Shown: in pieces, positions 6,801-62,220 of the stretch
Numbering within the stretch: the stretch's first letter is position 1
Layout of the letters: every line of letters starts with the position of its first letter
Assembly (NCBI GenBank): GCA_002269645.1
Contig: NIVC01000061.1
Location: 1,054,001 to 1,118,000 of the forward strand
Direction of reading: 5' to 3'
DNA: 64,000 bases
DNA from: Macrostomum lignano
Taxonomy: Eukaryota
Translations under genes and position numbers: made by a program
Notes under the pieces: model-generated
Database searches by the model: none
Told to the model about the DNA's origin: nothing
Seen by the model: only the letters and a program-made list of their open reading frames with translations

Positions 6801-7153
6801 TTAGCCACCTGCAGGCGAATGCGACAGTTCTCAGTGAGCTGCGCCAGCGGCTCCAGGTACTCTGGCGCCCGGCCATCAAGCACCTCTTGCTCTTTGGCGC
6901 GCAGAAATGCTAATCTGTCATCGAATAGGTGCGACTTTAGCCGCGAGAATTCCGCCTCAAGATGAGCGATTTCGTCTACATAGTCTATGCGACACTTGTC
7001 GTAATCCGACTCTTCGATGGACACCTGCTGCTGCTGCTGCTGAGACTGATCGAATGATGAAGCATCGGATGCTGCGGTGGCAACACTGGGGGGCCCGTTG
7101 GCAACCAGATTAGGCGGTGGAGACTGCGGAGGCAGTGAAGGCGGCTCCGACAT
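3810..7153 (-). CDS. BRMS1: BRMS1/BRMS1L-like Sin3-HDAC subunit (Sds3 family), 3 exons, 258 aa
   Basis: join(7153..6768, 4511..4360, 4048..3810), GT-AG introns phase 2 and 1, 777 nt. Motifs RAPEYLEPLAQL, KHYLECELQWAETQLE and C-terminal SGPVIVYQLTEAEIMDDYQAI match the BRMS1 family (RAPEYTEPL, KYECELQGA, SGPYIVYML). Confidence 0.9.
4130..4292 (-). mobile_element. tRNA-derived SINE-like copy S1 in BRMS1 intron 2
   Basis: Minus strand: A-box-like AAGCCCAGCGATAA, B box GGTTCGATTCC, followed by GAGGGCCAACCCCCAA..CACAG..AGTGTACATG, shared with the copy at 16.4-16.7 kb and more loosely the copy at 34.3-34.5 kb. Confidence 0.6.
4549..6720. repeat. 22-23 bp minisatellite (GAGAATCGCCCTAAACTGGCACA)n filling BRMS1 intron 1
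   Basis: Direct reading of tandem units with small variants. Confidence 0.97.
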
Positions 7154-7216
7154 CTTCTATGAATTGTTTATTCAGGGCATGAAGCAAGGTTGGGGCGATG
7201 CTATGTGTTGCTATGT

Positions 7217-8851
7217 TGTTAAGGGAGATTCTTTGGGCTGGTTAAGGGAGATTCTATGGGCTGGTTAAGGGAGATTCTTTGGGCTATTAAGGGAGATTCT
7301 ATGAACTGGTTAAGGGAGATTCCATGGGCTGGTTGAGGGAGATTCTATGAGCTGGTTAAGGGAGATTCTATGGGCTGGTTAAGGGAGATTCTATGAGCTG
7401 GTTAAGGGAGATTCTATGGGCTGGTTAAGGGAGATTCTATGAGCTGGTTAAGGGAGATTCTATGGGCTGGTTAAGGGAGATTCTATGGGCTGGTTAAGGG
7501 AGATTCTATGAGCTGGTTAAGGGAGATTCTATGAGCTGGTTAAGGGAGATTCTATGAGCTGGTTAAGGGAGATTCTATGGGCTGGTTAAGGGAGATTCTA
7601 TGGGCTGGTTAAGGGAGATTCTATGGGCTGGTTAAGGGAGATTCTATGGGCTGGTTAAGGGAGATTCTATGAGCTGGTTAAGGGAGATTCTATGGGCTAT
7701 TAAGGGAGATTCTATGAGCTGGTTAAGGGAGATTCTTTGGGCTGGTTAAGGGAGATTCTTTGGGCTGGTTAAGGGAGATTCTTTGGGCTGGTTAAGGGAG
7801 ATTCTATGGACTGGTTAAGGGAGATTCTATGAGCTGGTTAAGGGAGATTCTATGAGCTGGTTAAGGGAGATTCTATGAGCTGGTTAAGGGAGATTCTTTG
7901 GGCTGGTTAAGGGAGATTCTATTGGCTGGTTAAGGGAGATTCTATGGGCTGGTTAAGGGAGATTCTATGGGCTGGTTAAGGGAGATTCTATGAGCTGGTT
8001 AAGAGAGATTCTTTGGGCTGGTTAAGGGAGATTCTATGGGCTGGTTAAGGGAGATTCTATGGGCTGGTTAAGGGAGATTCTATGAGCTTGTTAAGGGAGA
8101 TTCTATGAGCTGGTTAAGAGAGATTCTTTGGGCTGGTTAAGGGAGATTCTATGGGCTGGTTAAGGGAGATTCTATGGGCTGGTTAAGGGAGATTCTATGG
8201 GCTGGTTAAGGGAGATTCTATGAGCTGGTTAAGGGAGATTCTTTGGGCTGGTTAAGGGAGATTCTATGAGCTGGTTAAGGGAGATTCTATGAGCTGATTA
8301 AGGGAGATTCTATGGGCTGGTTGAGGGAGATTCTATGAGCTGGTTAAGGGAGATTCTATGGGCTGGTTAAGGGAGATTCTATGAGCTGGTTAAGGGAGAT
8401 TCTATGAGCTGGTTAAGGGTGATTCTATGAGCTGGTTAAGGGAGATTCTATGGGCTGGTTAAGGGAGATTCTATGAGCTGGTTAAGGGAGATTCTATGGG
8501 CTGGTTAAGGGAGATTCTATGAGCTGGTTAAGGGAGATTCTATGGGCTGGTTGAGGGAGATTCTATGAGCTGGTTAAGGGAGATTCTATGGGCTGGTTAA
8601 GGGAGATTCTATGAGCTGGTTAAGGGAGATTCTATGGGCTGGTTAAGGGAGATTCTATGAGCTGGTTAAGGGAGATTCTATGAGCTGGTTAAGGGAGATT
8701 CTATGAGCTGGTTAAGGGTGATTCTATGAGCTGGTTAAGGGAGATTCTATGGGCTGGTTAAGGGAGATTCTATGAGCTGGTTAAGGGAGATTCTATGGGC
8801 TGGTTAAGGGAGATTCTATGAGCTGGTTAAGGGAGATTCTATGGGCTGGTT
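7217..8851. repeat. 23 bp minisatellite (GGTTAAGGGAGATTCTATG[G/A]GCT)n
   Basis: Homogeneous tandem units; reverse complement resembles the 4549-6720 unit. Confidence 0.97.
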
Positions 8852-25624: not shown

Positions 25625-25835
25625 CAGGGACAACTAAAAAACTCGGGACGGGAACAAGCCAAATCATGGTGAAAAAAGTTGGGGACTCGTTTAAGTCTAT
25701 GGGCGCCCAGTTTTTCATGCATTGAAAGTTCATGCTAGTTGGATGGCCATAGGACACTGCGCTTTCAAACGAGCCCCCAACTTTTTTCACCATGATTTGG
25801 CTTGTTTCGCGTCCCGAGTGTTTTAGTTGTCCCTG
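25625..25835. mobile_element. hAT-type MITE, 211 bp
   Basis: About 73 bp TIRs starting CAGGGACAACTAAAA; exact 8-bp TSD ATCAGGCC at 25617-25624 and 25836-25843. Confidence 0.88.
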
Positions 25836-25867
25836 ATCAGGCCTCTATGCGATCGCAGAATGAAGCG

Positions 25868-28800
25868 ATTGCAGTTGCACTTGAAGTTGCAGTTAAAGTT
25901 ACAGTTACAGTTGAAGTTGCAGTTGAAGTTGCAATTGAAGTTGCAATTGCAATTGCAGTTGCAGTTGCAGTTGCAGTTGCAGTTACAGTTGCAGTTACAG
26001 TTGCAGTTGCAGTTGCAGTTGCAGTTACAGTTACAGTTGCAGTTGAAGTTGCAATTGAAGTTGCAGTTACAGTTACAGTTGCAGTTACAGTTGCAGTTGC
26101 AGTTACAGTTGCAGTTACAGTTGCAGTTGCAGTTACAGTTACAGTTGCAGTTGCAGTTGCAGTTGCAGTTGCAGTTACAGTTACAGTTGCAGTTGAAGTT
26201 GCAATTGAAGTTGCAGTTACAGTTACAGTTGCAGTTACAGTTGCAGTTGCAGTTACAGTTGCAGTTACAGTTGCAGTTGCAGTTACAGTTACAGTTGCAG
26301 TTGCAGTTGCAGTTGCAGTTACAGTTACAGTTGCAGTTGAAGTTGCAATTGAAGTTGCAGTTACAGTTACAGTTGCAGTTACAGTTGCAGTTACAGTTGC
26401 AGTTGCAGTTACAGTTACAGTTACAGTTGCACTTGCACTTGAAGTTGCAGTTACAGTTACAGTTGCAGTTGCAGTTGCATTTACAGTTGCAGTTACAGTT
26501 GCAGTTGCAGTTGCAGTTGAAGTTGCAATTGAAGTTGCAGTTACAGTTACAGTTGCAGTTACAGTTGCAGTTACAGTTGCAGTTGCAGTTACAGTTACAG
26601 TTACAGTTGCAGTTGCAGTTGCACTTGAAGTTGCAGTTACAGTTACAGTTGCAGTTGCAGTTGCACTTGAAGTTGCAGTTACAGTTACAGTTGCAGTTGC
26701 AGTTGCAGTTGCACTTGAAGTTACAGTTACAGTTGCAGTTGCAGTTGAAGTTGCAGTTACAGTTACAGTTGCAGTTACAGTTGCAGTTGCAGTTGCAGTT
26801 GCACTTGCACTTGAAGTTGCAGTTACAGTTACAGTTGCAGTTGCAGTTGCAGTTGCACTTGCACTTGAAGTTGCAGTTACAGTTACAGTTGCAGTTGCAG
26901 TTGCAGTTGCACTTGAAGTTGCAGTTACAGTTACAGTTGCAGTTGCAGTTGCAGTTGCACTTGAAGTTACAGTTACAGTTACAGTTGCAGTTGCAGTTGC
27001 AGTTGCACTTGCACTTGAAGTTGCAGTTACAGTTACAGTTGCAGTTGCAGTTGCAGTTGCACTTGAAGTTACAGTTACAGTTACAGTTGCAGTTGCAGTT
27101 GCAGTTACAGTTACAGTTGCAGTTACAGTTGCAGTTGCAGTTGCAGTTGCACTTGCACTTGAAGTTGCAGTTACAGTTACAGTTGCAGTTGCAGTTGCAG
27201 TTGCACTTGAAGTTGCAGTTACAGTTACAGTTGCAGTTGCAGTTGCAGTTGCACTTGAAGTTACAGTTACAGTTACAGTTGCAGTTGCAGTTGCACTTGC
27301 ACTTAAAGTTGCAGTTACAGTTACAGTTGCAGTTGCAGTTGCAGTTGCACTTGAAGTTACAGTTACAGTTACAGTTGCAGTTGCAGTTGCAGTTGCAGTT
27401 GCAGTTACAGTTACAGTTGCAGTTGCAGTTGCAGTTGCACTTGAAGTTACAGTTACAGTTACAGTTGCAGTTGCAGTTGCAGTTACAGTTACAGTTGCAG
27501 TTGCAGTTGAAGTTGCAATTGAAGTTGCAGTTACAGTTGCAGTTGCAGTTACAGTTACAGTTGCAGTTGCAGTTGCAGTTGCACTTGAAGTTGCAGTTAC
27601 AGTTACAGTTGCAGTTGCAGTTGCAGTTGCACTTGAAGTTGCAGTTACAGTTACAGTTACAGTTACAGTTGCAGTTGCAGTTGCAGTTGCACTTGCACTT
27701 GAAGTTGCAGTTGAAATTGCAATTGAAGTTGCAGTTGCAGTTACAGTTACAGTTGCAGTTACAGTTGCATTTACAGTTGCAGTTGCAGTTGCATTTACAG
27801 TTGCAGTTACAGTTGCAGTTGCAGTTGCAGTTGAAGTTGCAATTGAAGTTGCAGTTACAGTTACAGTTGCAGTTACAGTTGCAGTTACAGTTGCAGTTGC
27901 AGTTACAGTTACAGTTACAGTTGCAGTTGCAGTTGCACTTGAAGTTGCAGTTACAGTTACAGTTGCAGTTGCAGTTGCACTTGAAGTTGCAGTTACAGTT
28001 ACAGTTGCAGTTGCAGTTGCAGTTGCACTTGAAGTTACAGTTACAGTTGCAGTTGCAGTTGAAGTTGCAGTTACAGTTACAGTTGCAGTTACAGTTGCAG
28101 TTGCAGTTGCAGTTGCACTTGCACTTGAAGTTGCAGTTACAGTTACAGTTGCAGTTGCAGTTGCAGTTGCACTTGCACTTGAAGTTGCAGTTACAGTTAC
28201 AGTTGCAGTTGCAGTTGCAGTTGCACTTGAAGTTGCAGTTACAGTTACAGTTGCAGTTGCAGTTGCAGTTGCACTTGAAGTTACAGTTACAGTTACAGTT
28301 GCAGTTGCAGTTGCAGTTGCACTTGCACTTGAAGTTGCAGTTACAGTTACAGTTGCAGTTGCAGTTGCAGTTGCACTTGAAGTTACAGTTACAGTTACAG
28401 TTGCAGTTGCAGTTGCAGTTACAGTTACAGTTGCAGTTACAGTTGCAGTTGCAGTTGCAGTTGCAGTTGCACTTGAAGTTGCAGTTACAGTTACAGTTGC
28501 AGTTGCAGTTGCAGTTGCACTTGAAGTTACAGTTACAGTTACAGTTGCAGTTGCAGTTGCAGTTGCACTTGAAGTTACAGTTACAGTTACAGTTGCAGTT
28601 GCAGTTGCAGTTGCACTTGCACTTGAAGTTGCAGTTACAGTTACAGTTGCAGTTGCAGTTGCAGTTGCACTTGAAGTTACAGTTACAGTTACAGTTGCAG
28701 TTGCAGTTGCAGTTGCAGTTGCAGTTACAGTTACAGTTGCAGTTGCAGTTGCAGTTGCAGTTGCAGTTACAGTTACAGTTGCAGTTGCAGTTGAAGTTGC

Positions 28801-29511
28801 AATTGAAGTTGCAGTTACAGTTGCAGTTGCAGTTACAGTTACAGTTGCAGTTGCAGTTGCAGTTGCACTTGAAGTTGCAGTTACAGTTACAGTTGCAGTT
28901 GCAGTTGCAGTTGCACTTGAAGTTACAGTTACAGTTACAGTTGCAGTTGCAGTTACAGTTGCAGTTGCAGTTGCAGTTGCACTTGCACTTGAAGTTGCAG
29001 TTACAGTTACAGTTACAGTTGCAGTTGCAGTTGCACTTGAAGTTGCAGTTACAGTTACAGTTACAGTTGCAGTTACAGTTGCACTTGCACTTGAAGTTGC
29101 AGTTACAGTTACAGTTGCAGTTGCAGTTGCAGTTGCACTTGCACTTGAAGTTGCAGTTACAGTTACAGTTACAGTTACAGTTGCAGTTGCAGTTGCAGTT
29201 GCACTTGCACTTGAAGTTGCAGTTACAGTTACAGTTACAGTTGCAGTTGCAGTTGCACTTGAAGTTGCAGTTACAGTTACAGTTACAGTTACAGTTGCAG
29301 TTGCAGTTGCAGTTGCACTTGCACTTGAAGTTGCAGTTGAAGTTGCAATTGAAGTTGCAGTTGCAGTTACAGTTACAGTTGCAGTTACAGTTGCATTTAC
29401 AGTTGCAGTTACAGTTGCAGTTGCAGTTGAAGTTGCACTTGAAGTTGCAGTTACAGTTACAGTTGCAGTTGCACTTGCAGTTTCACTTGAAGTTACAGTT
29501 ACAGTTAAAGT
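25868..29511. repeat. Hexamer satellite (CAGTTG/CAGTTA with AAGTTG, CAATTG, CACTTG variants), left part
   Basis: Strict 6-nt phase over 3.6 kb; continues at 31551-31708 after the LINE. Confidence 0.98.
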
Positions 29512-31550
29512 GGAATCCCTGGAATCCCGGGGCACGCACGAGCACCTTATCCACTGGATCATGTACATGGTCTCCCATCGTACTGCCACCTCGCACCTCC
29601 TGGGACACTCCCGCTCTGTGGAGGTCCAGAAAGGCGAACCGCAAGGTGGAGTCCTCAGCCCGATCCTCTGGAATTTAGCCATGGACGAGCTGCTCTGCAG
29701 CCCGCATCCGGACCCGGTTCAGATGGTCGGCTATGCGGACGATGTTACCGCCACTGTGGCTGGACCATCACCCGCGGTCCTCAGGGACCTCCTTCAAGCC
29801 TTCATCCACCGTGCCGAGCGCTGGGCACATAGCTGCGGTCTCAGGTTCTCTGAGTCTAAAACCGTGGCTATTATGTTCACCAGTCGCCGAAACTGGAGGA
29901 TCGAACCGCTCTCCCTCTATGGCAAACCCGTTGCCATGGAGAAACAAACCAGATGTCTGGGTGTCACCCTCGACCACAGGTTGAGTTGGACTCCGCACGT
30001 CCAATCCAAAGCCCGCAAAGCCCTCGCGACTCTCGCGCAGATCCGCAGAGCTTTCGGCGCCACCTAGGGCCTCACCCCCCGCCGCCTCTGGTGGATTTAC
30101 ACTGCCATTGTTAGACCGGCCATCTTCGCCGGCTTCATTTGGAACAGTGCTCTAGAGGTGAAAGGGGTTCTTGAGGCTCTAAATAGGGTGCAAGGCCGCG
30201 CTTGTCGAGCTATCATGAGCGCGGCTCCCTCTACGCCCTTCGCTGGGATGAACTCCTTCATGGACATTCCCCCCTCGACCTCTTTGTCAGAAAGGAGGCA
30301 ATGAAGACCACCCGCCGTCTACTTGACGCGGGTGTCCAAATCCAGAAGCAGTTCGCCTTTAGAAAGCGGAACCTATGGCCGCACGGCGACCTCAGCATGC
30401 GAGACCTGGAAGCAGCGGGAGGCCTGCTGACCCTCTCGGACGGAATCCCGTCCACGCTCTGCTCTCCGCTCAAATTCAAAACAGCATTCCACCACGTCAT
30501 GAAGCAAGGGACAACTGGAAATCCCGTGAAATCCACTGCTTCACTGACAAGACCCAAATCAACTCCGCCCCTGGCTACGGCTACTGCATCGTGTCTGGAG
30601 GGAGAACTGTGGCGACCTTCTCCCAGCACACCGGCACCTGCTCCACCGTCTTCCAGAACGAAGTTCTCGCCATCTGCTCCTGTGCCATGGAGCTGTACAA
30701 TCAGCGCGTCTGGGGGAAGGAAATTACCCTCCACTCGGACAGTGAAGCTGCTATTCACGCCCTTGAGCGCACCACCACCTGCTCGCGTACAGTCCTTGAC
30801 TGCATCGGGCAGCTCAACCGCTTAGGCGCCTCCAACAAGGTGTCCCTAAGGTGGATCCCAGGGCACTCGGACCACCCCGGCAATGAGTTGGCCGATCGCC
30901 TGGCCAAGGATGGCCCAACCGGTTCTTTTACTGGTCCTCTGCCCGTGGCCCCCACCCCCACCGCCGTTGTCACCACTCGGATCAACCAGTGGGTGGCTCA
31001 AAGCACAAGGAAATGTGGCCTTACGCCCCAGACTGCCGGGAATCCCGCGCGGCTGTCCCCTGTTCTCCCCCGCCCTCCACAGGGCCCTGCTTGGACTCAA
31101 CCGCAGGGACATCAGGGCGGTGACCATGGCCCTCTCGGGTCATGGCTGTTTTGCCAGGCATCGCTACCTCCAGGGAAAAATCCGCAGTGAGGAATGCCCA
31201 TTCTGCCTCTCCGGTGTCGAGAATGCGGAGCACTTTATCTGTGAATGCCCCGCCTTTACTCAGGACAGGCTCACCCACCTCGGCCCAAACCCGGACCTCT
31301 CCGACGTTTTCAGGCCCGAGAATCTCTGCCAGCTCGTCCGCTACCTAAGGGCTACTGGGCGAGCGGCAGTCCACCTCCTGGACCCTCCGGAGGGGGACCA
31401 CGCTGCGGACATCGGCGCCACCGGAACTCCCTGCGCGACACCGCAGCACTAGCTGCCCGTGGTCGCCAGGGGCTAGCGAAATGGGCGGCAACGCCTCCTC
31501 GCTGTTTCCGGACGCACGGAGCCCCGTGCAGCTAAGTCAAGTAAGTCAAG
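29512..31550 (+). mobile_element. 5'-truncated, decayed LOA-type non-LTR retrotransposon (RT + RNase H + CCHC)
   Basis: RT motifs KGEPQGGVLSPILWN and YADD; in-frame TAG at 30065; RNase H (FTD, FQNE, SDSEAA, WIPGH, GNELADRLAK); C-terminal CPFC-x8-HFICEC; at least 3 frameshifts; tail (TAAGTCAAG)2. Clade assignment from domain order and motifs. Confidence 0.85.
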
Positions 31551-42524: not shown

Positions 42525-45030
42525 AGCCGCGGTGGAACAAGCCAATGACTACGCCCGGTACAAAATCCAAGTGGCTGAGCTTTTCGACCGATTCCCAGTG
42601 CACCGGGTGGTCCGATTCGACCATGACTACCGCCAGCATCGCGCCGCCAACAGTCTCCGCTGGGGAAAAGACTGCTCCCAGATGTTTATCAGGCACCTGC
42701 TCAGCACTAAGAGTGACCAGCAGAACCAGCAGAACCAGACAGCCAGGCGTCCCCAGCCTAAAAATAACCGCATCGTTGGGCCGCGAACATCCTCAGGCCG
42801 TGAGCTCTGTCTGTCTTTCAACAGCACCAACGGATGCTCAAGAACGAACTGCCGCTTTCTGCATGCCTGTCGAGTCTGCGAGGGCAACCACTCCGAGCAG
42901 AATCACGCAAAAAACTGAGAAAGCGCGCCAATTGCGCGCGCACAGCCGATTTTACGCCTTCTGATTTTAACAACCTGACGCAGCCTGCCCCAGCGGCAGG
43001 CCTCCTCAGGCCGTCTACTCAAATCTCTGATCTGACGCGGCCGTCTGGTGATCTCCAAATCGACGCCTGGCGCCTGGAGCTCGCCGGTGACCACGACGCT
43101 GATTTTATTCTTGACGGCATCCCTATGGCTTCCATGGCTTCCCTATTAAGCATGGCTTCCCTATTGCTGATGACCTTGATTTTACGCCCTGTTTTCTGAG
43201 CAACTACAAATCCTCCTACCAAAAGCGCGACCAAGTCCAAGCAGCCCTAGAAGAAGAAATCCGTCTGGGCAGATACATCCCGGTGGCGGACAAGCCCACG
43301 ATGGTCTGCCCGCTTGGCGCGATTCCTAAGGACAGCGCCAGCATCTGGCTGATCCACGACTGCTCCGTTCCTCACGGCCAAAGCCTGAACGACCACTACG
43401 CACAGCAGCGCAAGCTCCGCTTCACTTCTGTCGATGAGGCCGTCAGGTTGATGCAGCCGGGCTGGTTCATGGCGAAGGTTGACATCGCATCCGCCTACCG
43501 TGCTGTGCCCATTTCTCCGCAGTGCTACCAAGCCACCGGGATCCACTGGGACTTCGGTGACGGGCGCTCGGCTTACATAGTGGACACGCGGCTACCATTC
43601 GGCAGTCGTGCCTCTGTCAGCATCTTCCATCGTCTCACTCAAGCGGTTCGGCGTATGATGTGCCGCAAAGGCTTCCTGGCCACCATTGTCTTCATAGATG
43701 ACTTTCTTGTCATGGCGAGGACAGAAGCTGAGTGCAACCGAGCCTACTGCGAGCTGCGTAACCTGCTCACCGAGCTTGGATTCGTCATCAACGAGAGAAA
43801 AGCCGTGCCACCAACAACCAAGCTGCGGTTCCTGAGGATAGACATCGATACCGTGCAAGCGAGCCTCTCTTTCCCAGCTGACAAAGCCAAGAAGGTTCAG
43901 TTCCCGCTTCACACCTGCCTGTCGCAGCAAGACGTGTCGAAGTCTGAGTTGCAGAAGCTGCTAGGGCATCTCAGCCATGCCCATATGTGCACTACCGCTC
44001 AGCACGGTCGAACCTTCCTGCGCCCGCTCATCGATCTCACCAATAGCCTGACGCATCCGTCCGACCGTGTTCAAGTTAACGGTGGAGCTCAGGTCTCAGC
44101 TGGAGTGGTGGACGATCGCGTTGAGCATTCTGCCGCTAAAGTCCGCTTGGCCATCGCGTCGGCCGGCCGCCGCTATCGAGTCTGACGCCTGCATCGCAGG
44201 CGGCGTAGCGGTGCTGCACTTCGACGACAGTGACTCGACCTGGCTTTTTATTAGCTGGCAACTCGACTGCGGTAGCGAGTTCGAAGAGCTCCACATCAAA
44301 CTCAAGGAGTGCGCCGCCCCTCTGGTCGCTATCCTGAAGCATCAAGAGGCCCTCAGCGGCCGCTCCGTTGCGGTGTGCACGGACAGCACCGCTGCCTGCG
44401 GCATCATCAACTCTAGCTCGGCCAAGCATCGCAGCATCGCCGACCTGCAGAGGCTCGTCACTCTGACCTGCATCCAGCGTGACATTATCGTGCGCGCGTA
44501 CCACGTGCCTGGCCGCTTTCAGCTTCTCGCGGACCCGCTATCCAGAGCTAACGACCCTAGCCAGCTTGCTAACTTTCTTTTTCGTTTCTACGGCACCTGC
44601 TACGTGCCTACCCGCTTGCTTGCATCTGCTTGCTTGAGTCCTGCCGCTGCTTCTCACCTTCTTTTTCAGGTCCGCCTCCTGTGGTCTCAGTGCCTAGCCT
44701 CAGCTCGTCCGCCCGCCAACTGCTCGGCCGTGGCTTCGCAAACTCAACCAGCGCCGCCTACGCCACCCAGTGCGCATCCTGGTTGCGGTGGTTCTGCGAT
44801 GCCCATGGAGTTCGGCCACTGTCAGCGCAGCCTGCCGACGTGTGCAACTACCTGGCGGAGCTGGCTGGAAACCGACTGTTCTCCGTCAGCAGCCTGTCCT
44901 GTCACCTCGCAGCCGTGTCCTGGTTCTACAAGGCGAACGGTGTGGTCGACTCTACCAAGCAGCCACTGGTACAGCTTGCGCTGCGCGGAGCCCGACGGCT
45001 CCTTGGTGCTGCCCCAAAGAGGGCAGCACC
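42525..45030 (+). mobile_element. Decayed tyrosine-recombinase retrotransposon (Ngaro/DIRS group)
   Basis: Gag remnant ending in CLSFN..NGC..TNCRFLHACRVC Cys/His cluster; RT (LPFGSRAS, FIDDF); RNase H (ESDAC, TDST, LLADPLSR); YR N-terminal domain (STSAAYA...SLSCHLAAVSWFY). No methyltransferase seen; frameshifts near 43130 and 44090; catalytic YR half missing. Confidence 0.85.
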
Positions 45031-48430: not shown

Positions 48431-49560
48431 TCACTGGCGAATCAAGCATTCGAAGTTCCTCATCGAGTAGAACAGCGTCAGCTCCAGGCCAGCGTCGTGC
48501 AGATAATAGTACATTCCTCCGCCTGAAAATGCGGCTGGTGGCACCAGGTACACTCCGTTGGGGTTGATAAAAGTGCACAGGCCGAACCACCAACCAGCTG
48601 ACCTGTCATGGGCGCAGTTGTTCGCAGCCCAGTTGTCATTGTCAGAATCGGGTGTGCTGAACTGCCAGTTGTTCGGTGACCAGTCCGAATAAGTTCGCTG
48701 TCCGACACTCGACCTGCTCGCGTCCAACGGTCCCATCGAGCACCTGTACTTGTCAGTCGCTGTGCCAACAGAGAACGGAGCATTCTCAGCCCAGTACCAG
48801 GTGCCGTTCCAGTCGCTGAACTCCCAGCGGACTCTCCACACTCCCGTGGCGGTGAGCTGGTGCAGCTGCTCCAGCCCCATCCAGTAGTTGAGACTCTCGC
48901 CCTGACCGAATCCACTGACGTACTCCGACCAGCCACGGTTGAAGCTGACGGAGCCGTCGACTCTGCGCTGGAACGTCGTCCAGCAGGTTTCCGACGGCTC
49001 TTTCATCTGCAGTTTGAGAGACAGGACGATTCATCAGTCAGCGACCCAAGTCTCAGCTCACTCACCCACAGCATCATCAGCAGACTCAGCTTACTCACTC
49101 ACAGCATCGGCAGACTCAGCTCACTCACCCACAGCACCGGCGGACTCAGCTCACTCACCTACAGCACCGGCAGACTCAGCTCACTCACCCACAGCATCGG
49201 CAGACTCAGCTCACTCACCCACAGCATCATCAGCAGACTCAGCTCACTCACCCACAGCATCGGCAGACTCAGGTCGCTCTCATGCCGGCACTTCCTGCAG
49301 CCGTCCTTGCCGCCCCGGTCGCAGACCAGCAGGTCGCAGCCGCCCGATGCAGCGTCGAAGGAGGCCGCGTGAGCCCCGGCCACCGCAGCGCTGCTGACGC
49401 AGTGCGTCTCGGTTTGAGCTCGGATCGAGTTGAGCAGCCGGTACTCGGAGACGTCGCCTCGGAGCCGCTTCCAGGTCGTGACGGCCTGGGCCGAGACGGC
49501 CGGCAGGGCGAGCAGGACGGAGGCGATGGCGCAGAGATGAAGGCTCAGATTTGAACTCAT
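48431..49560 (-). CDS. Secreted PAN/apple-like + FReD protein, copy 2, about 294 aa
   Basis: join(49560..49252, 49006..48431), phase 0 GT-AG; near-identical to copy 1 from LLALPAVSA onward. Confidence 0.87.
49045..49272 (-). repeat. 30/33 bp donor-bearing repeat in FReD2 intron
   Basis: Mirror of 38543-38730. Confidence 0.92.
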
Positions 49561-55800: not shown

Positions 55801-57325
55801 CATATCTATTCCAATCTCGTCTATCACATCTACTCGGTACAACTCATATCAATCCCACATATTTCCCTCTTCGAAATCTTGTTTAAAGGAGAAATAAAAG
55901 ATAAAAAATCGTGTATTTCTACTAGCAGTAGCAAAGTTAGGCAAGGGATTCGCCCTGTATTTCCCAAGCAGAAGTTCAAAAATAGCAAATTCCGTCAGCT
56001 TCTGCGCACTCCCCCGGCTCTGGGAACCATAAATAGGCTTTAGCAAGGGGAACTCCGGGTCCTAATCCTAAATCCTACTCTAGCTAATCTCTCTCCCAGC
56101 CACGCGATGACTCAGCCCAGAAGATCAGCTTGGGTGCAAGTTGAGCTCAGAGTGCTCCCCCTGCTTGACGCTGGCGTAGCGGCCGTTGAAAGCTTTGACT
56201 GCCACCTGCGGGTAGCTGGCCTCCAGGACAAACAGTTCGTCCTTCGTGACGTTCTGGTTTTTTGTTTTGGTGGTGCCGCTGGACCCAGTGTTGGTGAGGT
56301 AGCGGCCGTTTGAGTCCTGCGTTTAAGCAATGGGCAATGGGTTGTGCTGATTGAGTTCATTACTAGGCACAAATTCATGGGTGGGAGAGAGTTCGAGCAG
56401 GGTGCGCTCTGGAAGTCCTTCTATTGAATCACCTAAAAGCTCCATGATTTTAATAGCAATCCGTTTGAAGGTCTAAGAACTTGCTAATCATCCTCAGCCT
56501 AATTTTTATCCCATCCTTACCGCATCTTCACTGTATCCTCGTCTCATCCATATCACATTCTCATCATATCCTCGCCGCATTCTCGTCACATCCTCACCGC
56601 ATCCTGAATACATCCTGATCACATTCTGATCACATCCTGATCACATCCTCACCGCATCCCGATCTCCAGCTCACCTTGAACGCCAGGCCGGGCGCGGCAC
56701 CGCAGTGGAACTCAGGGCTGAGCAGCACCTCCTCGGACATCTCTGCTGAGAGCTCGCCAGTCCGGCTCAGGTAGCTCCCGTCCGATGCCCGAATGGCCAC
56801 TCGGCCGTCGACAGACTGCATCAGCGTGATGAGACTCTCAGCGCCCCAGGGGTTGACCCGGTCGCCGGAGATCTCGCCGTCGCCCAGCCGCAGGTAGCGA
56901 CCCCGATTGAGATTCTTCAGGTGCACCTGCGGGTGCAGCGCCAGCTGGCACTTCCACCAGACTGGCGACCGGGCGAAGCACCGCACCTGGTCCCCCTCGC
57001 CGCTGAAGTACCAGCCGTGCAGGACGCTCCTCAGGGCCAGGCGAGCTCCCCCTTCTGAGGAATACTCGACGGCGAAGCGCTCCTCGGTGTCCACCGACTC
57101 GGCGCAGGCGGTCACGTTGCCGTCCTTGTCAGCGGACAGGTAGCGATTCAGGTGCGAGCGCAGGGCCACGAATGACTCCGTGTGCGCGTCCGGCACCAGA
57201 GTCCAGGTCTGGCGCTTCTTCAACGAGCTGGCGGACACGTTCAGCTTGAAGCCGAATGGCTCGGCCGTCAGGAACTTGCCGGTGGCCGCGCTGCACAGGC
57301 CGACCTTCCAGCCGGAGTCTTCCAT
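52801..57325 (-). CDS. FSCN: Fascin (actin-bundling, beta-trefoil), 5 exons, 486 aa; intron 2 donor non-canonical
   Basis: join(57325..56675, 56316..56160, 55354..55195, 53691..53402, 53003..52801) = 1461 nt in phase; [35 protein letters not shown]-terminal LWEY*. Donor after 56160 reads GGGAGC. Confidence 0.92.
53140..53365. repeat. 22 bp repeat (AATTCCCATTCGTAATTCCCCT)n in fascin intron 4
   Basis: Direct reading. Confidence 0.9.
53850..55170. repeat. 26 bp minisatellite (CTATCTCAGATCTAATCTACTCTCCT)n in fascin intron 3
   Basis: Direct reading. Confidence 0.96.
55437..55830. repeat. 26 bp minisatellite (CTATCTCAGATCTATTCCACTCTCAT)n in fascin intron 2
   Basis: Direct reading; sister of the intron 3 unit. 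Confidence 0.95.
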
Positions 57326-57827: not shown

Positions 57828-58152
57828 TTCAATTGTGCTTGAATAGGTGTGTCAGGGGTGCTTGAATAGGTGTGTCAGAGGTGCTTGAATAGGTGTGTCA
57901 GAGATGCTTGAATAGGTGTGTCAGAGATGCTTGAATAGGTGTGTCAGGGGTGCTTGAAAATGTGTGTCAGAGATGCTTGAATAGGTGTGTCAGAGGTGCT
58001 TGAATAGGTGTGTCAGAGATGCTTGAATAGGTGTGTCAGAGATGCTTGAATAGGTGTGTCAGGGGTGCTTGAAAATGTGTGTCAGAGATGCTTGAATATG
58101 TGTGTCAGAGGTGCTTGAATAGGTGTGTCAGAGATGCTTGAATAGGTGTGCC
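57828..58152. repeat. 23 bp repeat (TGCTTGAATAGGTGTGTCAGAGA)n
   Basis: Direct reading. Confidence 0.93.
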
Positions 58153-58757
58153 AGTGGTCTTACTGTACTTTTCCTAAATTTAAGAGAAGTTCCTGTCTTC
58201 ATTCGCTAATTCTTTCTCTCACAGAAAAATTCGCACATTTCTACTTGACAGTAGTGTAGTGAAAATTTAGCTATAGAAATCGTATTGATTGGGTTAAAAT
58301 AGTTTATTGGTAAATCGGCCTTGGGTACCAGATAAGTTTGCCGCAATAAATGATGAATAAACACCGATTTAGTCAACTGCGACAGCAGCCCATAAAAGTT
58401 GTTAATCAGACATTAAAATCACAGTATGCATAAATGTAGTATTTACACTGCTATAAGGTTTAACTACACAAAACAAAGAATATTACCGGAAAAGTGCAAC
58501 TCAGCAAAGGTACAAAATAGCAAATCTGAATTAGGATTAATTCAGACTGACAAAATTAGTGTGCGAGCGCCATTCAATGTAAACAATATGCATGTGCATG
58601 TCCGTGTGCCAGTGTGCCAATTTGAAATTGTAGAAACGAGTGTGAAATTTTGTTATAATTCAAAGATGAAATGGCTGGGGGATTGCTTTTCAATTCCTAA
58701 TGGATTGAAGGATGGCGCCAGTTGCAAAGCGTTAATTATGCGGCTGCAGTTAGTCTG

Positions 58758-59180
58758 AGGGGTGTCAGTTGGTAGGTCTACGGGATGTCAGCTAGGTCTA
58801 TTGGATGTCAGTCAGGTCTATGGGATGTCAGGCAGGTCTTTGGGGTGTCAGTTAGGTCTATGGGGTGTCAGTTAGGTCTATGGGGTGTCAATGGGGTGTC
58901 AGTTAGGTCTATGGGGTGTCAATGGGATGTCAGTTAGGTCTGTGGGATGTCAGTCAGGTCTATGGGGTGTCAGTTATGTCTATGGGATGTCAGTCAGGTC
59001 TATGGGGTGTCAGTTAGGTCTATGGGGTGTCAGTTAGGTCTATGGGGTGTCAGTTAGGTCAATGGGGTGTCAGGTAGGGTTGTAGGGTGTCAGTCAGGTT
59101 TATATGACGTCAGCAATGGGGTGTCAGTTAGGTCAATGGGGTGTCCGGTAGGGTTGTAGGGTGTCAGTCAGGTCTATATG
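58758..59180. repeat. About 20 bp repeat (GGGGTGTCAGTTAGGTCTAT)n 3' of alpha-kinase gene
   Basis: Direct reading. Confidence 0.9.
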
Positions 59181-59204: not shown

Positions 59205-60992
59205 TCAGGCCCTGTGCACAATGGAGGTGGGCTCTGGCAGGGCCTTGCCGAACCAGGCCTGCACAATGAGATAGTAGCGGTCCCTGGACTGGATGTCGAG
59301 CTGGCGGCAGGCGTGGCAGTTGTTGCCGTTGTTGGGGCCGCAGAAGCCGTCAGTCATGCGGTCCCGAGCCATGTTCTTCCTGCCGCAGTAGAATTTGTTA
59401 GTCTCGCTGCTCAGTCTGGAGACCGCGCCTTCCCGATTGACTAAGGCTCGAATTTTGAGCAGGCCGAACTCCTCAAGGTCTCTGCGCATGCAGCCGCAGC
59501 AGTTGCAGCCGTTCCTGGGGCCGCAGGAGCCGTCGCAGCAGTCGCAGGGAGGGCCGTTCAGGCGCCGGCCGCAGTAGTTCTTGCGGGTCAGGTTGAAGCT
59601 CGCCTCTGGCAGGTCCTGGCCGGCTCTGGGGGATGCGATGGGAATGCAATGATTTGGAGATAAATAAGTGATGGAGTGCAGAACGGAGGCTGTGACAGTG
59701 AATAGTGAAAGATTTGACACAGAAAATTAGCAATGGCAGTTGAAGGGAAAGAAAGACAGAGGCAGGGAAGGAGAGGTAGAGAGGGGAGAGAGGGAGTGGG
59801 GGGAGAGGGAGAGGGGAGGGCAGAGAGGGAGAGGGGAGGGCAGAGAGGCAGAGGGGAGGGCAGAGAGGGAGAGGGGAGGGCAGAGAGGCAGAGGGGAGGG
59901 CAGAGAGGGAGAGGGGAGGGCAGAGAGGCAGAGGGGAGGGCAGAGAGGCAGAGGGGAGGGCAGAGAGGGAGAGGCGAGGGCAGAGAGGGAGAGGCGAGGG
60001 CAGAGAGGGAGAGGGGAGGGCAGAGAGGGAGAGGGGAAGGCAGAGAGGGAGAGGGGAGGGCAGAGAGGGAGAGGGGAGGGCAGAGAGGGAGAGGGGAGGG
60101 CAGAGAGGGAGACGGGAGGGCAGAGAGGGAGAGGGGAGGGCAGAGAGGGAGAGGGGAGGGCAGAGAGGGAGAGGGGAGGGCAGAGAGAAGGGGAAGGTAG
60201 GAGAGAGGTGCAGCGAGGAGTAAGGAATGAGAGGCAGAGCGTGACAGAAAAGTGACAGACAAAACTGACTGAAGAGGCGGATGCTGCAGCCAGTTACGCA
60301 ACTCACTTCAAATCCGAGATGGGGAACAGGATGCAGACGCTGGTGCAGCGGTGGCTGCTGAAGAACCGCACGAAGCCGTCTCTGCCCAGATCGGTGTCGC
60401 CGAACTTGCCGCCCTCCCGGCTGTGCACCGCCGGGTCAGTCAGCCAGTATCCTCGCGAAGTCCTGACGCCCTGGATGTCGCAGACGAGATACCTGCCGCC
60501 AGTCTTGTAGTAGGTGTAGTGCGAGAAGCAGGGCACGGTGGCCACCTCGTCGCTCTGGTAGTGGGCATTGTTGTTGAACTTCTCGTACCTGCCCTCGATG
60601 AACTCTTCAACAAGGATTTTGTCGCCACGTCGCGAGTAGCAGCTGCCGGTGGTCAGCACGGTGGCCATCGCTGGCTGCACAAACCGCAGTGGCTTGGAGC
60701 TGACGAACTCCTTGTTGAACAGCTCGGCCAGCTTGCCCGCCTTCCTGCTGGCCTGCATGTCGGCTTCGTAGTCTGCCAGGGCACCGCCGTGGCGACATGC
60801 CGCGATGGCCACCTTGGCGACGCAGCGCTTGCCGTTCAGCGGCCCCCGGCCCCGGTAGACGCCCTGAAATGCCAAGCGGCAGCTGCCGTTGGCGAACGGG
60901 CGCTCCTGAAAGTCGATCAGGTAGGCGGCACCATCGATTGTTGAGTCCAACTCGGCGGTCTGGTGAGCTGCTTGAGCCATGCTGGAACCCAT
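59205..60992 (-). CDS. Alpha-kinase (eEF2K/MHCK/ALPK-type) fused to two Cys-rich repeats, about 368 aa
   Basis: join(60992..60307, 59625..59205), phase 2 GT-AG. Kinase motifs PFANGSCRLAF, CVAK, EEFIEGRYEKFNNN, FSHYTY, LVCDIQG, LTDPAVHS, GDTDLG, HRCxxxC. Exon 2 has 2x YCGR..DGxCGPxNGxNCxxC. Confidence 0.85.
59790..60190. repeat. 18 bp polypurine repeat (GAGGGAGAGGGGAGGGCA)n in alpha-kinase intron
   Basis: Direct reading. Confidence 0.96.
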
Positions 60993-61566: not shown

Positions 61567-62220
61567 CTAGCTCAGTGCAGCATCAGCCGTAGCGCCCGCC
61601 CTGTGCAAGCGTTTCTCATGATTGCGCAGATGCGTCAGCCGTTTGAAAGCCCGGCCGCACTGACGGCACTCGAACGGGCGTTCACCGCTGTGGATTCGCT
61701 CGTGCTCAACCGCGTGCGGCTTGTGAGCAAAGCTGCAGTCGCAGTGGCGGCACTTGTACGGCCGCTCGCCGGAGTGAATCCGACGGTGCACCTGCAGGTG
61801 GCCCTTCTCCAGGAAGCCGCGGCCGCAGATGTCGCATTTGAACGGCCGTTCGTTCGAATGCGACATCGAGTGACGCTTTAGTCCGAACCGAGTTTTGAAG
61901 GCCTTGCGGCAGTCAGTCCGATCGCAGACGAACGGTCTGGCTGCAGAGCTGTGCTCTCGGCTAGCGTGCTGCTTCAGCGCTCGGGTAGAATAGAACGGCT
62001 TCTTGCACTGGGCGCAGGAGATCCCGATGCTCGCCTGATCCCCACTCTGATGACCAAATTTCCCGTCGACCACTCTGCTGCTGCTGTTGTACACCGCAAA
62101 GTCTGCAACGATGAAACCATCTTCATAGTAGTCGCTTGATGGCGAGTGCTGAGAATCGGCGAAGTCTTCTAAACCGTCTTTGTCGCTGTGCTGCATGCTG
62201 CTTTCAGAAATCAAGTTCAT
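61567..62220 (-). CDS. C2H2 zinc-finger protein, 5 fingers, 217 aa
   Basis: Five C-x2/4-C...H-x3/4-H units with SNERPF, SGERPY and SGERPF linkers; acidic N-terminus. Confidence 0.9.

What the first reader, a model, noticed from the sequence alone, without database searches (positions are those of the whole stretch)
59205..60992. Alpha-kinase fused to an unassigned tandem Cys-rich domain
Seen: a compact kinase with intact catalytic and Zn motifs splices in phase to two repeats, KNYCGRRLNGPPCDCCDGSCGPRNGCNCCGC and KFYCGRKNMARDRMTDGFCGPNNGNNCHAC (consensus YCGR..DGxCGPxNGxNCxxC). Established: animal alpha-kinases (eEF2K, ALPK1-3, TRPM6/7) have other accessory domains, and ALPK1 is an innate sensor. 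I cannot place this repeat in a named family. Inference: novel architecture with a likely metal-binding or ligand-sensing C-terminal module.
Basis: partly seen in the sequence, partly recalled or inferred. Interest (0 to 1): 0.7.

Follow-up and report, generated by a model that had tools for sequence, protein, structure and literature searches.

The report
Alpha-kinase with captured zinc-repeat module
A flatworm (Macrostomum lignano) gene joins a small, intact alpha-type protein kinase to a cysteine-rich double repeat from a widespread but unnamed zinc-module family that normally ends RING ubiquitin ligases, which makes it a young chimeric signalling gene.

Summary
On the minus strand, exon 1 (60992-60307) encodes a complete alpha-kinase (Pfam PF02816, E=1.5e-42) with the ATP-binding lysine, catalytic aspartates and glutamine, and zinc ligands all present. 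A GT-AG, phase-2 intron (60306-59626) joins it in frame to exon 2 (59625-59205). The 368-aa product is 99% identical to a transcript-derived GenBank model from Macrostomum lignano.

Exon 2 encodes a real tandem repeat: profiles of the two halves match each other at hhalign E=7.5e-15. Twelve cysteines are 87-100% conserved, which fits about three zinc sites. The module belongs to a family of at least 711 clusters found in flatworms, rotifers, a jellyfish, a brittle star, chytrids and protists. It has no Pfam model, no PDB sequence match and no Foldseek match.

The module's usual partner is RING + Sina zinc finger, with the module at the C-terminus. Rarer partners are Ras/Roc, a conventional kinase, PHD, MACPF and astacin. 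Of 371 fetched proteins, only this M. lignano protein combines it with an alpha-kinase.

Exon 2 is closest to the last exon of an M. lignano RING-Sina paralogue, which has the same intron phase. The kinase's old stop codon lies inside the splice donor. This points to exon capture.

The most likely function, by inference, is a zinc-stabilised targeting module.

The parts
60307..60992 (-). Exon 1: start codon (MGSS...) through residue 228 plus two bases of codon 229. It holds the whole alpha-kinase.
   Evidence: The same exon, with 4 nucleotide differences, is found in two copies in GCA_002269645.1.
60333..60890 (-). Alpha-kinase catalytic domain (residues 35-220).
   Evidence: Pfam PF02816, E=1.5e-42, covering the full profile. 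PDB sequence matches to 4kuj, eEF2K, MHCK-A and TRPM7 kinase.
60813..60815 (-). K60, the ATP-binding lysine (motif CVAKV).
   Evidence: Invariant in alignment A5. Coordinates.
60471..60479 (-). D172-I-Q174, the catalytic Asp and Gln (motif CDIQGV).
   Evidence: Aligns with the VDIQGV motif of eEF2K. Invariant.
60435..60437 (-). D186, the metal-binding Asp (motif LTDP).
   Evidence: Aligns with the YTDP motif of eEF2K. Invariant.
60333..60353 (-). H214-x-C216-x3-C220, three of the kinase's zinc ligands. The fourth, H158, lies at 60519-60521.
   Evidence: Aligns with the SHACNRIC motif of eEF2K. Invariant. The zinc motif is described in PMC2827801.
59626..60306 (-). Phase-2 GT-AG intron of 681 nt. 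The in-frame TGA at 60303-60305 overlaps the donor GTGAGT, so intron retention would give a 229-aa stand-alone kinase.
   Evidence: The intron is 819 and 805 nt in the two other copies, with conserved splice sites.
59803..60187 (.). 20-nt minisatellite inside the intron (19.2 copies, 96% matches). It accounts for the intron length variation.
59205..59625 (-). Exon 2: residues 229 (third base) to 368 plus the stop codon. It encodes the Cys-rich module and a 19-aa tail.
   Evidence: It has no in-frame ATG before M46 of the module, so it cannot encode the module on its own.
59466..59603 (-). Module half 1 (ASFNLTRKNYCGRRLNGPPCDCCDGSCGPRNGCNCCGCMRRDLEEF). It has 8 family-conserved Cys plus one extra.
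59277..59447 (-). Module half 2 (ALVNREGAVSRLSSETNKFYCGRKNMARDRMTDGFCGPNNGNNCHACRQLDIQSRDR). It has 4 conserved Cys.
   Evidence: The AF2 model of this unit has pLDDT 89.8.

Best explanation
This is a two-exon Macrostomum lignano gene for a 368-aa chimeric protein.

Shown:
- An N-terminal, catalytically intact alpha-kinase is spliced in frame to a C-terminal module of about 115 aa.
- The module is two copies of a roughly 50-aa unit (beta-hairpin, YCG, DGxCGPxxGxxCxxC running into a helix).
- The module belongs to a large, unnamed eukaryotic family. It is usually the C-terminal domain of RING + Sina-zinc-finger E3 ligases, and it also occurs with Ras/Roc GTPases, a conventional protein kinase, PHD fingers, a MACPF domain and astacin.

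Inferred:
- The 12 conserved cysteines (8 + 4) hold about three zinc ions and make a rigid binding surface.
- The module acts as a targeting or partner-recognition domain, in the position where SIAH-type ligases carry their substrate-binding domain.
- In this gene it brings the kinase to whatever the M. lignano RING-Sina paralogues recognise.
- The gene arose in the Macrostomum lineage. A copy of the terminal, phase-2 exon of a P0003-like RING-Sina gene landed downstream of a single-exon alpha-kinase. A 5' splice site overlapping the kinase's stop codon (AAG TGA GT read as AA|GTGAGT) then joined the two.
- Unspliced RNA would still yield the stand-alone kinase.
For: Kinase:
- Pfam E=1.5e-42 over the full profile.
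- eEF2K, MHCK-A and TRPM7 alignments cover the catalytic and zinc motifs.
- K60, H158, D172, Q174, D186, H214, C216 and C220 are invariant.

Junction:
- GT-AG with compatible phase.
- The deposited model has the same 368 aa and comes from a transcript-based annotation.
- Three gene copies keep both exons and the splice sites while the intron varies between 681, 805 and 819 nt.
- Exon 2 has no start codon of its own.

Module is real:
- 711 clusters.
- Internal repeat at E=7.5e-15.
- 12 Cys conserved at 87-100% across 143 complete copies.
- Confident AF2 models, pLDDT 83.7 and 89.8.

Targeting role:
- In 73 of 101 proteins of 230 aa or more, the module lies within 30 aa of the C-terminus.
- Its partners are catalytic or signalling domains that typically rely on other regions for targeting.

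Exon capture:
- Exon 2 is 62% and 54% identical at protein level to the C-termini of P0003 and P0004, against 46% or less for other family members.
- It is 76% identical at DNA level over 315 nt to the last exon of P0003, and nothing else of that gene is in the window.
- Both genes have a phase-2 intron just upstream of the module.
- dS is 0.59 to P0003, against 1.0-2.5 in the comparisons involving P0004. dN/dS is 0.42 and 0.13.
- The nearest kinase outside M. lignano (P0002, 57% identity) is a complete 270-aa protein without the module.
- Only 1 of 371 fetched proteins has both domains.
Against: - No experimental read across the junction was seen here.
- No zinc, binding partner or substrate is known for any family member, so the targeting role rests on position and domain partners only.
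- In this protein, two glycines that are 94-97% conserved in the family, in the first hairpin (ARLG..G), are replaced (N and R). The N-terminal NxxG motif is missing, and the first 11 residues of the module model have pLDDT below 50.
- dN/dS against P0003 (0.42) is higher than between the two RING paralogues (0.23), so constraint may be relaxed.
- The databases hold few flatworm transcriptomes, so calling the fusion unique to M. lignano depends on sampling.
Confidence: 0.55

Rival explanations
1. The module is a sensor or autoregulatory domain. It binds a small ligand or a second messenger and switches the kinase on, as the N-terminal domain of ALPK1 does with ADP-heptose. On this view it does not recruit a protein substrate.
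For: The module is attached to very different effector domains: RING, Ras/Roc, a conventional kinase, MACPF and astacin. That pattern is typical of sensor modules as well as adaptor modules. Its strict conservation of Gly, Asn and Asp positions besides the Cys could reflect a defined pocket.
Against: No similarity to any known ligand-binding fold was found. The kinase is not close to ALPK1 (E=2e-7, against 1e-18 for 4kuj and eEF2K). A small module with about three zinc sites has little room for a buried pocket (inference).
Confidence: 0.2
2. This is a young chimeric gene in which the captured exon is translated but has no selected function. It is a neutral by-product of the segmental duplication and repeat-rich turnover in the M. 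lignano genome.
For: The fusion is seen only in M. lignano. Conserved glycines of the first hairpin are lost. dN/dS against the donor lineage is raised, at 0.42. The stop codon lies inside the donor, so the stand-alone kinase can still be made. The gene sits among minisatellites and retroelement fragments.
Against: All 12 family-conserved cysteines and most other invariant positions are kept. dN/dS is still below 1. The gene copies differ by 1 synonymous change and no replacement in exon 2. The AF2 model is confident.
Confidence: 0.13
3. The fusion is an annotation artefact. On this view the kinase is a single-exon gene ending at TGA 60303-60305, and the downstream ORF is a separate (trans-spliced) gene or a dead exon.
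For: The kinase ORF closes exactly at the proposed donor. M. lignano has frequent SL trans-splicing and polycistronic precursors (PMC5730564). I saw no cDNA read myself.
Against: Exon 2 has no ATG before the middle of half 1, so a separate gene would lose 8 of the 9 cysteines of half 1 (7 of its 8 conserved ones). The splice sites are consensus and the phase is compatible. The GenBank model comes from transcript assemblies whose gene boundaries were cut at trans-splice and poly(A) evidence. The exon is intact in all three copies.
Confidence: 0.07

Closest known systems
Compact alpha-kinases, eEF2K and Dictyostelium MHCK-A (Pfam PF02816)
   Same: The catalytic domain has the same lysine, D-x-Q, TDP aspartate, Gly-rich stretch and His/Cys zinc site. 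The best PDB sequence matches are 4kuj (E=2.4e-18), eEF2K (E=6.5e-18) and MHCK-A (E about 1e-14).
   Different: There is no calmodulin-binding or SEL1-like region (eEF2K), no WD40 or coiled coil (MHCK-A) and no channel (TRPM6/7). Only 34 residues precede the domain. The accessory domain is the Cys-rich module, which was not seen on any other alpha-kinase fetched.
ALPK1 (ADP-heptose sensor kinase)
   Same: It is an alpha-kinase whose function is set by a non-catalytic domain. The general logic of 'recognition module + alpha-kinase' is shared.
   Different: The kinase domains are only distantly similar (E=2e-7). ALPK1's sensor domain is a large N-terminal helical domain, whereas this one is a small C-terminal zinc module. 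No sequence or fold relation was found.
M. lignano RING + Sina-zinc-finger proteins P0003 and P0004 (BOX15_Mlig003331g1, BOX15_Mlig009760g1), and the wider RING-Sina-module family
   Same: They carry the same C-terminal module (62% and 54% protein identity). P0003 also has a phase-2 intron directly before the module and 76% DNA identity over 315 nt.
   Different: They are E3-ligase-type proteins (RING, Sina_ZnF PF21361) with no kinase. This gene has no RING or Sina remnant anywhere in the window.
Conventional kinase + module protein P0227 (Pkinase PF00069 at 7-264, module at 300-415)
   Same: It follows the same design, an N-terminal protein kinase with a C-terminal module. This shows that a kinase-module combination arose at least twice.
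   Different: Its kinase superfamily is unrelated (eukaryotic protein kinase fold), and its source is an unnamed environmental or assembly contig.
Small zinc-binding modules of E3 ligases (B-box, ZZ, TRAF/Sina zinc fingers, BIR)
   Same: All are Cys-rich and about 50 aa. In this module the CxxC pair leads into a helix. They sit next to RING domains and presumably bind zinc.
   Different: No Pfam model matches, even at E<=10, in 35 members. The best PDB sequence hits are insignificant (NDK7 0.06, BIR 0.22). Foldseek found nothing at E<1 for the whole module or for one unit.

Membership tests
Alpha-kinase family (PF02816) | Full-length match to the family profile above the curated cut-off | tested here: met
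   146.3 bits against a cut-off of 21.3, E=1.5e-42, profile positions 2-185 of 185.
Alpha-kinase family (PF02816) | ATP-binding Lys, catalytic Asp-x-Gln and metal-binding Asp | tested here: met
   K60, D172, Q174 and D186 are present and invariant among relatives. They align with the eEF2K motifs.
Alpha-kinase family (PF02816) | C-lobe zinc site (His, His, Cys, Cys) | tested here: met
   H158, H214, C216 and C220 are present. The motif is described in PMC2827801.
Alpha-kinase family (PF02816) | Protein kinase activity | not testable with these tools
   This needs an in vitro assay.
eEF2 kinase | Calmodulin-binding segment before the kinase domain and a C-terminal SEL1-like helical repeat domain that binds eEF2 | tested here: not met
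   Only 34 residues precede the domain. The C-terminus is the Cys-rich module, and there is no other Pfam hit.
ALPK1-type sensor kinase | Large N-terminal ligand-binding domain and close kinase-domain similarity | tested here: not met
   There is no N-terminal domain. ALPK1 is the weakest alpha-kinase match in the PDB (E=2e-7 to 4e-7).
TRPM6/7 channel-kinases | TRP channel fused N-terminally to the kinase | tested here: not met
   The protein is 368 aa and has no channel domain.
Unnamed tandem Cys-rich module family (defined here by profiles A1 and A2) | Match to the family profile over both halves | tested here: met
   P0001 residues 231-349 match profile positions 7-123 at E=7.1e-43.
Unnamed tandem Cys-rich module family (defined here by profiles A1 and A2) | The 12 conserved cysteines (8 in half 1, 4 in half 2) | tested here: met
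   All 12 are present, at module positions 18, 27, 29, 30, 34, 40, 42, 45, 80, 95, 103 and 106.
Unnamed tandem Cys-rich module family (defined here by profiles A1 and A2) | N-terminal hairpin motif NxxGxxARLGxxGK of half 1 | tested here: not met
   Here it reads ASFNLTRK. The Asn and both glycines are lost. The motif is also degenerate in the M. lignano paralogues P0003 and P0004.
Unnamed tandem Cys-rich module family (defined here by profiles A1 and A2) | Zinc binding | not testable with these tools
   Zinc binding is inferred from the Cys conservation and the cytosolic partner domains.
SIAH/Sina-type RING E3 ligases | RING finger plus Sina zinc finger | tested here: not met
   The protein has no RING or Sina_ZnF, and the window has no remnant of either.
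Any named zinc-finger or Cys-rich domain in Pfam-A or the PDB | Significant sequence or fold match of the module | tested here: not met
   Pfam gave nothing for 35 members at E<=10. PDB profile search gave a best E of 0.06. Foldseek against the PDB and BFVD gave a best E above 1.

The most novel reading that the evidence does not exclude
The tandem Cys-rich module may be a previously undescribed zinc-binding recognition domain. It would give one shared 'address', a common protein, modification or small ligand, to very different effectors across flatworms, rotifers, cnidarians, echinoderms, chytrids and protists. Those effectors are RING-Sina ubiquitin ligases, Ras/Roc GTPases, two unrelated kinase superfamilies, a MACPF pore-former and a metalloprotease. 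That would be a modular stress or immune-type signalling set. The M. lignano alpha-kinase would then be a freshly recruited effector that phosphorylates the same target its RING paralogues ubiquitinate.
Probability: 0.15. Interest if true: 0.75.

Novelty: new variant of a known kind. Interest (0 to 1): 0.5.

Why it matters
Alpha-kinases are defined functionally by their accessory domains: the WD40 of MHCK-A, the SEL1 repeats of eEF2K, the sensor domain of ALPK1 and the channel of TRPM7. This gene adds an accessory domain not reported for the family. It also shows, at near-nucleotide resolution, how such a combination can arise, through a stop codon embedded in a splice donor plus a copied terminal exon of matching phase.

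Independently of this gene, the work delimits a sizeable eukaryotic domain family. It has at least 711 clusters at 50% identity, 12 conserved cysteines, confident structure models, and no Pfam model or detectable structural relative. The family is a good candidate for curation and for structure determination.

M. lignano has transgenesis and RNAi, so both the kinase and its RING-Sina paralogues can be tested in vivo.

Tried and rejected
- Pfam on the module alone and on 35 family members at E<=10 gave only scattered single hits (ATG14 and some DUFs), which I rejected as noise.
- The PDB profile search gave a best E of 0.06 for NDK7 and 0.22 for BIR (a CCDG look-alike). I rejected both as not significant.
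- Foldseek of the whole-module model against the PDB and BFVD, and of the single-unit model against the PDB, gave a best E above 1, TM-scores of 0.36 or less and unrelated targets. No fold assignment was possible.
- I tried to look up the spliced 368-aa protein in read-derived assemblies as cDNA evidence. The tool turned it away because the protein is not a contiguous ORF of the window, and I did not try it by another route.
- Literature searches for the locus tag, for alpha-kinases in Macrostomum, for PDB code 4KUJ, and for alpha-kinase/RING/zinc-ribbon comparative-genomics papers found nothing that describes the module or the fusion.
- I searched for RING/Sina remnants, or a second copy of the kinase or module, in the 64-kb window. 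There were none.
- The alpha-kinase profile search, meant to place the kinase in a named subfamily, returned 211 proteins, and almost none of the 120 listed carry a name, so no subfamily name could be assigned.
- I considered an ALPK1-like innate sensor reading and rejected it as a membership claim.
- I considered disulfide-rich extracellular repeats and rejected that for this protein, because its partners are cytosolic domains and it has no signal peptide-like N-terminus. The rare astacin and MACPF partners leave the question open for other family members.
Full report
**What is in the sequence**

On the minus strand, an ATG at 60992 opens a 686-nt exon. It ends at 60307 with AA|GTGAGT. After a 681-nt intron (60306-59626) and an acceptor ...CATCCCCCAG|A, a 421-nt exon runs from 59625 to the TGA at 59205-59207. 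The two bases left over from exon 1 plus the first base of exon 2 make a lysine codon, and the frame continues, giving 368 aa.

The exons are about 63% G+C and the intron is 61%. The intron holds a 20-nt CT-rich minisatellite (59803-60187, 19.2 copies).

**The kinase**

Residues 35-220 match Pfam Alpha_kinase over the entire profile (E=1.5e-42, 146 bits against a cut-off of 21). The best solved relatives by sequence are:
- a 'protein kinase, putative' (4kuj, E=2.4e-18)
- eEF2K (E=6.5e-18)
- Dictyostelium MHCK-A (E about 1e-14)
- the TRPM7 kinase (E=2.8e-12)
- ALPK1, much weaker (E=2e-7)

The printed eEF2K alignment lines up FSHYTY, VCDIQGV, LTDPAVH, GDTDLG and SHRCTSVC with the corresponding eEF2K motifs. 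In an alignment with three relatives, K60, H158, D172, Q174, D186, H214, C216 and C220 are invariant (coordinates). The zinc motif and its requirement for activity are described in the alpha-kinase review PMC2827801. The kinase therefore looks catalytically competent.

It is very compact. Only 34 residues precede the domain, and the protein starts MGSSMAQ, which fits the simple N-myristoylation pattern. The closest foreign relative, P0002 (MGNAGGK), fits the pattern too. This is pattern-level inference only.

**Is the splice real?**

A protein search returned P0001, 'hypothetical protein BOX15_Mlig023966g1 [Macrostomum lignano]'. It is 368 aa, 99% identical and covers 100% of the query, so it is the same two-exon model. 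This also identifies the organism.

P0001 is encoded at two places in assembly GCA_002269645.1. Both copies have exons of exactly the same length, with 5 nucleotide differences from the window (2 replacement, 3 silent). Their splice sites are conserved, and their introns are 819 and 805 nt instead of 681, which reflects minisatellite copy number.

The paper describing that assembly states that the GenBank annotation was made from a genome-guided transcriptome. It used StringTie/TACO plus de novo transcripts, with boundaries cut at trans-splice and poly(A) evidence (PMC5730564). This is indirect RNA support.

Exon 2 has no in-frame ATG before the middle of its first repeat. It cannot encode the module as a separate gene.

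One detail matters. The kinase reading frame, if not spliced, stops at TGA 60303-60305, which is part of the donor GTGAGT. Intron retention would therefore give a 229-aa stand-alone kinase.

I could not view reads across the junction.

**The Cys-rich module**

The C-terminal 139 aa have no Pfam match, but they are not an orphan.

The first protein search found the same region at the C-terminus of several proteins:
- two M. lignano RING/Sina-zinc-finger proteins (P0003, P0004)
- chytrid proteins (Cladochytrium, Obelidium)
- a protist protein
- several metagenome proteins

A profile of 11 such regions, run against 1.84 billion representative proteins, found 711 clusters at E<=1e-3, 293 at E<=1e-10 and 59 at E<=1e-30. 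A second word-indexed search found 138 proteins, including bdelloid rotifers. Cluster look-ups added the brittle star Amphiura filiformis and the jellyfish Rhopilema esculentum. All of these are labelled 'uncharacterized'.

The consensus is NxxGxxARLGxTGKYYCGxxLxxxCxCCxGxCGPxNGCNCxxCMxLDxxxRxLPxGxLVNxxGxxxRxxxxxGxFYCGRxVxxxxxxxDGYCGPxxGPxCxACxxLxxQxxxRY.

The two halves are homologous. hhalign of half-1 against half-2 profiles gives probability 98.4%, E=7.5e-15, over 48 columns. Some family members carry 3-6 units.

In 143 complete copies, 12 cysteines are conserved at 87-100%, eight in half 1 and four in half 2. All 12 are present here. Together with the cytosolic partner domains, this makes about three structural zinc sites the most likely reading. 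That is an inference, because no coordinates were available to check the geometry.

AlphaFold2 gives confident models:
- Whole module: pLDDT 83.7, pTM 0.77.
- Single unit: pLDDT 89.8.

Each unit is a beta-hairpin, the YCG strand, a long loop, and a helix that begins at the CxxC pair.

Nothing known resembles the module:
- The PDB profile search gave a best E of 0.06.
- Pfam on 35 members at E<=10 gave nothing consistent.
- Foldseek against the PDB and BFVD gave a best E above 1, for the module and for one unit.

**What the module travels with**

Among 89 longer family members, the commonest partners are RING fingers (26 with zf-C3HC4_3, and more with other RING models) and Sina_ZnF (14), with TRAF-type zinc fingers in 3. 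Individual proteins show these combinations:
- TPR + RING + Sina_ZnF + module (P0153, jellyfish)
- Ras + RING + module (P0222)
- Roc/Ras + module (P0224)
- a conventional Ser/Thr kinase + module (P0227)
- PHD fingers + module (P0209)
- MACPF_SNTX + DUF7656 + module (P0243)
- astacin + repeated units (P0194)

In 73 of 101 members of 230 aa or more, the module lies within 30 residues of the C-terminus. In the RING-Sina proteins this is where SIAH-type ligases carry their substrate-binding domain (established knowledge of SIAH architecture).

Only the M. lignano protein has both.

**Origin of the fusion**

Several observations bear on how the gene arose:
- The module here is 62% and 54% identical to those of the M. 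lignano proteins P0003 and P0004, and 46% or less to all others aligned.
- P0003 is a multi-exon gene whose last exon encodes just the module. The intron before it is phase 2 (…TCCAG|GTGGGT … CCCCTCAG|A), the same phase as here, and lies seven codons closer to the first YCG.
- DNA similarity between the P0003 locus and the window is confined to the module-coding part (76% over 315 nt, with stretches of 48 identical bases). It stops at the exon edges.
- No RING or Sina remnant exists in the window.
- Synonymous divergence is lowest between this exon and P0003 (dS 0.59; P0003-P0004 1.02; window-P0004 saturated). dN/dS is 0.42 and 0.13.
- The nearest kinase outside M. lignano is P0002. It is 57% identical and comes from two Logan read assemblies of an unidentified organism. 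It is a complete 270-aa protein with a different, Cys-free tail.

The simplest history is that a copy of the terminal exon of a P0003-like gene landed downstream of a single-exon alpha-kinase. It was then recruited through a 5' splice site that overlaps the old stop codon. This is inference, consistent with all the observations above.

**How it most likely works**

Shown:
- The alpha-kinase is intact.
- It is fused in frame to a conserved tandem Cys-rich module.
- The module is a mobile C-terminal domain of signalling enzymes.

Inferred:
- The module is a zinc-stabilised recognition domain.
- It directs the kinase to the partner or partners recognised by the RING-Sina paralogues, so the same target could be phosphorylated as well as ubiquitinated.

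I put about 0.9 on the structural statements and about 0.5 on the targeting mechanism. The rivals are:
- a ligand-sensing or autoregulatory role (0.2)
- a young chimera whose extra domain is not under selection (0.13), supported by the lost hairpin glycines and the higher dN/dS
- an annotation artefact (0.07)

**Comparison with what is known**

By every testable criterion the protein is a member of the alpha-kinase family. It is not eEF2K, ALPK1-3, TRPM6/7 or an MHCK/vWKA type, because it lacks their defining accessory domains (PMC2827801). It is not a SIAH-type ligase.

The module belongs to no family named in Pfam-A (2025 copy) or represented in the PDB. I could not consult InterPro, AlphaFold DB or HHpred, so a distant relation to a known zinc-finger class remains possible.

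**Verdict**

The novelty is moderate.
- The protein is already deposited as a hypothetical protein.
- The fusion appears to be a lineage-specific event.
- The accessory module is an uncurated, fairly large eukaryotic domain family with a distinctive architecture spectrum.
- The gene gives an unusually clear example of exon capture.

Interest is 0.5, and the category is a new variant of a known kind.

Noticed in passing
window 60303-60312 (minus strand): The kinase frame's stop codon TGA is part of the 5' splice site (AAG TGA GT read as AA|GTGAGT). Spliced RNA therefore gives the 368-aa fusion, and unspliced RNA would give a 229-aa stand-alone kinase.
   Followed up: partly
window 59803-60187; L001 and L002 introns: A 20-nt CT-rich minisatellite (19.2 copies, 96% matches) fills most of the intron. 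The intron is 681 nt here but 819 and 805 nt in the two copies in GCA_002269645.1, while the exons differ by only 5 bases.
   Followed up: partly
window 58747-59177 and 57835-58158: Two more minisatellites lie downstream of the gene. One has a 20-nt unit (21.6 copies) and starts about 30 nt after the stop codon, so it is probably in the 3' UTR. The other has a 23-nt unit (14 copies). The intron of the paralogue P0003 (L005) also carries unrelated minisatellites next to its module exon.
   Followed up: no
window 61567-62220 (minus strand): A 217-aa C2H2 zinc-finger ORF lies 575 nt upstream of the kinase start, on the same strand. The same neighbour is found in both other copies (L001, L002 at 1775-2428). 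Given the polycistronic transcription of M. lignano, they might share a transcriptional unit.
   Followed up: no
window 56630-57325 (minus strand): An ORF with a fascin/FRG1-like domain (Pfam Fascin, E=6.6e-21) lies downstream on the same strand. A matching gene is called in L002 at 7045-7452.
   Followed up: no
window 43283-44185 (+), 30375-31190 (+), 25802-30067 (both strands): There are retroelement fragments: reverse transcriptase (E=2e-13) and RNase H (E=1.8e-11). A 4-kb stretch also has ORFs of more than 1,200 codons open on both strands, which suggests repetitive or low-complexity sequence.
   Followed up: no
window 48431-49006 (minus strand): An ORF with a fibrinogen C-terminal globular domain (E=9.5e-34) is probably an exon of a fibrinogen-related protein gene.
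   Followed up: no
window 60972-60992; L003 40-60: This kinase (MGSSMAQ) and its closest foreign relative P0002 (MGNAGGK) both begin Met-Gly and fit the simple N-myristoylation pattern. This hints at membrane association.
   Followed up: no
proteins P0243, P0227, P0222, P0194 (not in the window): The same Cys-rich module is fused elsewhere to a stonustoxin-type MACPF domain, a conventional Ser/Thr kinase, a Ras + RING pair and an astacin protease. The range of effector partners is unusually wide for such a small domain.
   Followed up: partly
window 59307-59351 versus L005 5176-5220: Half 2 of this module and half 1 of the P0003 module still match at DNA level (86.7% over 45 nt). This may reflect strong codon and sequence constraint on the DGxCGPxNGxNC core, or gene conversion between repeat units.
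   Followed up: no
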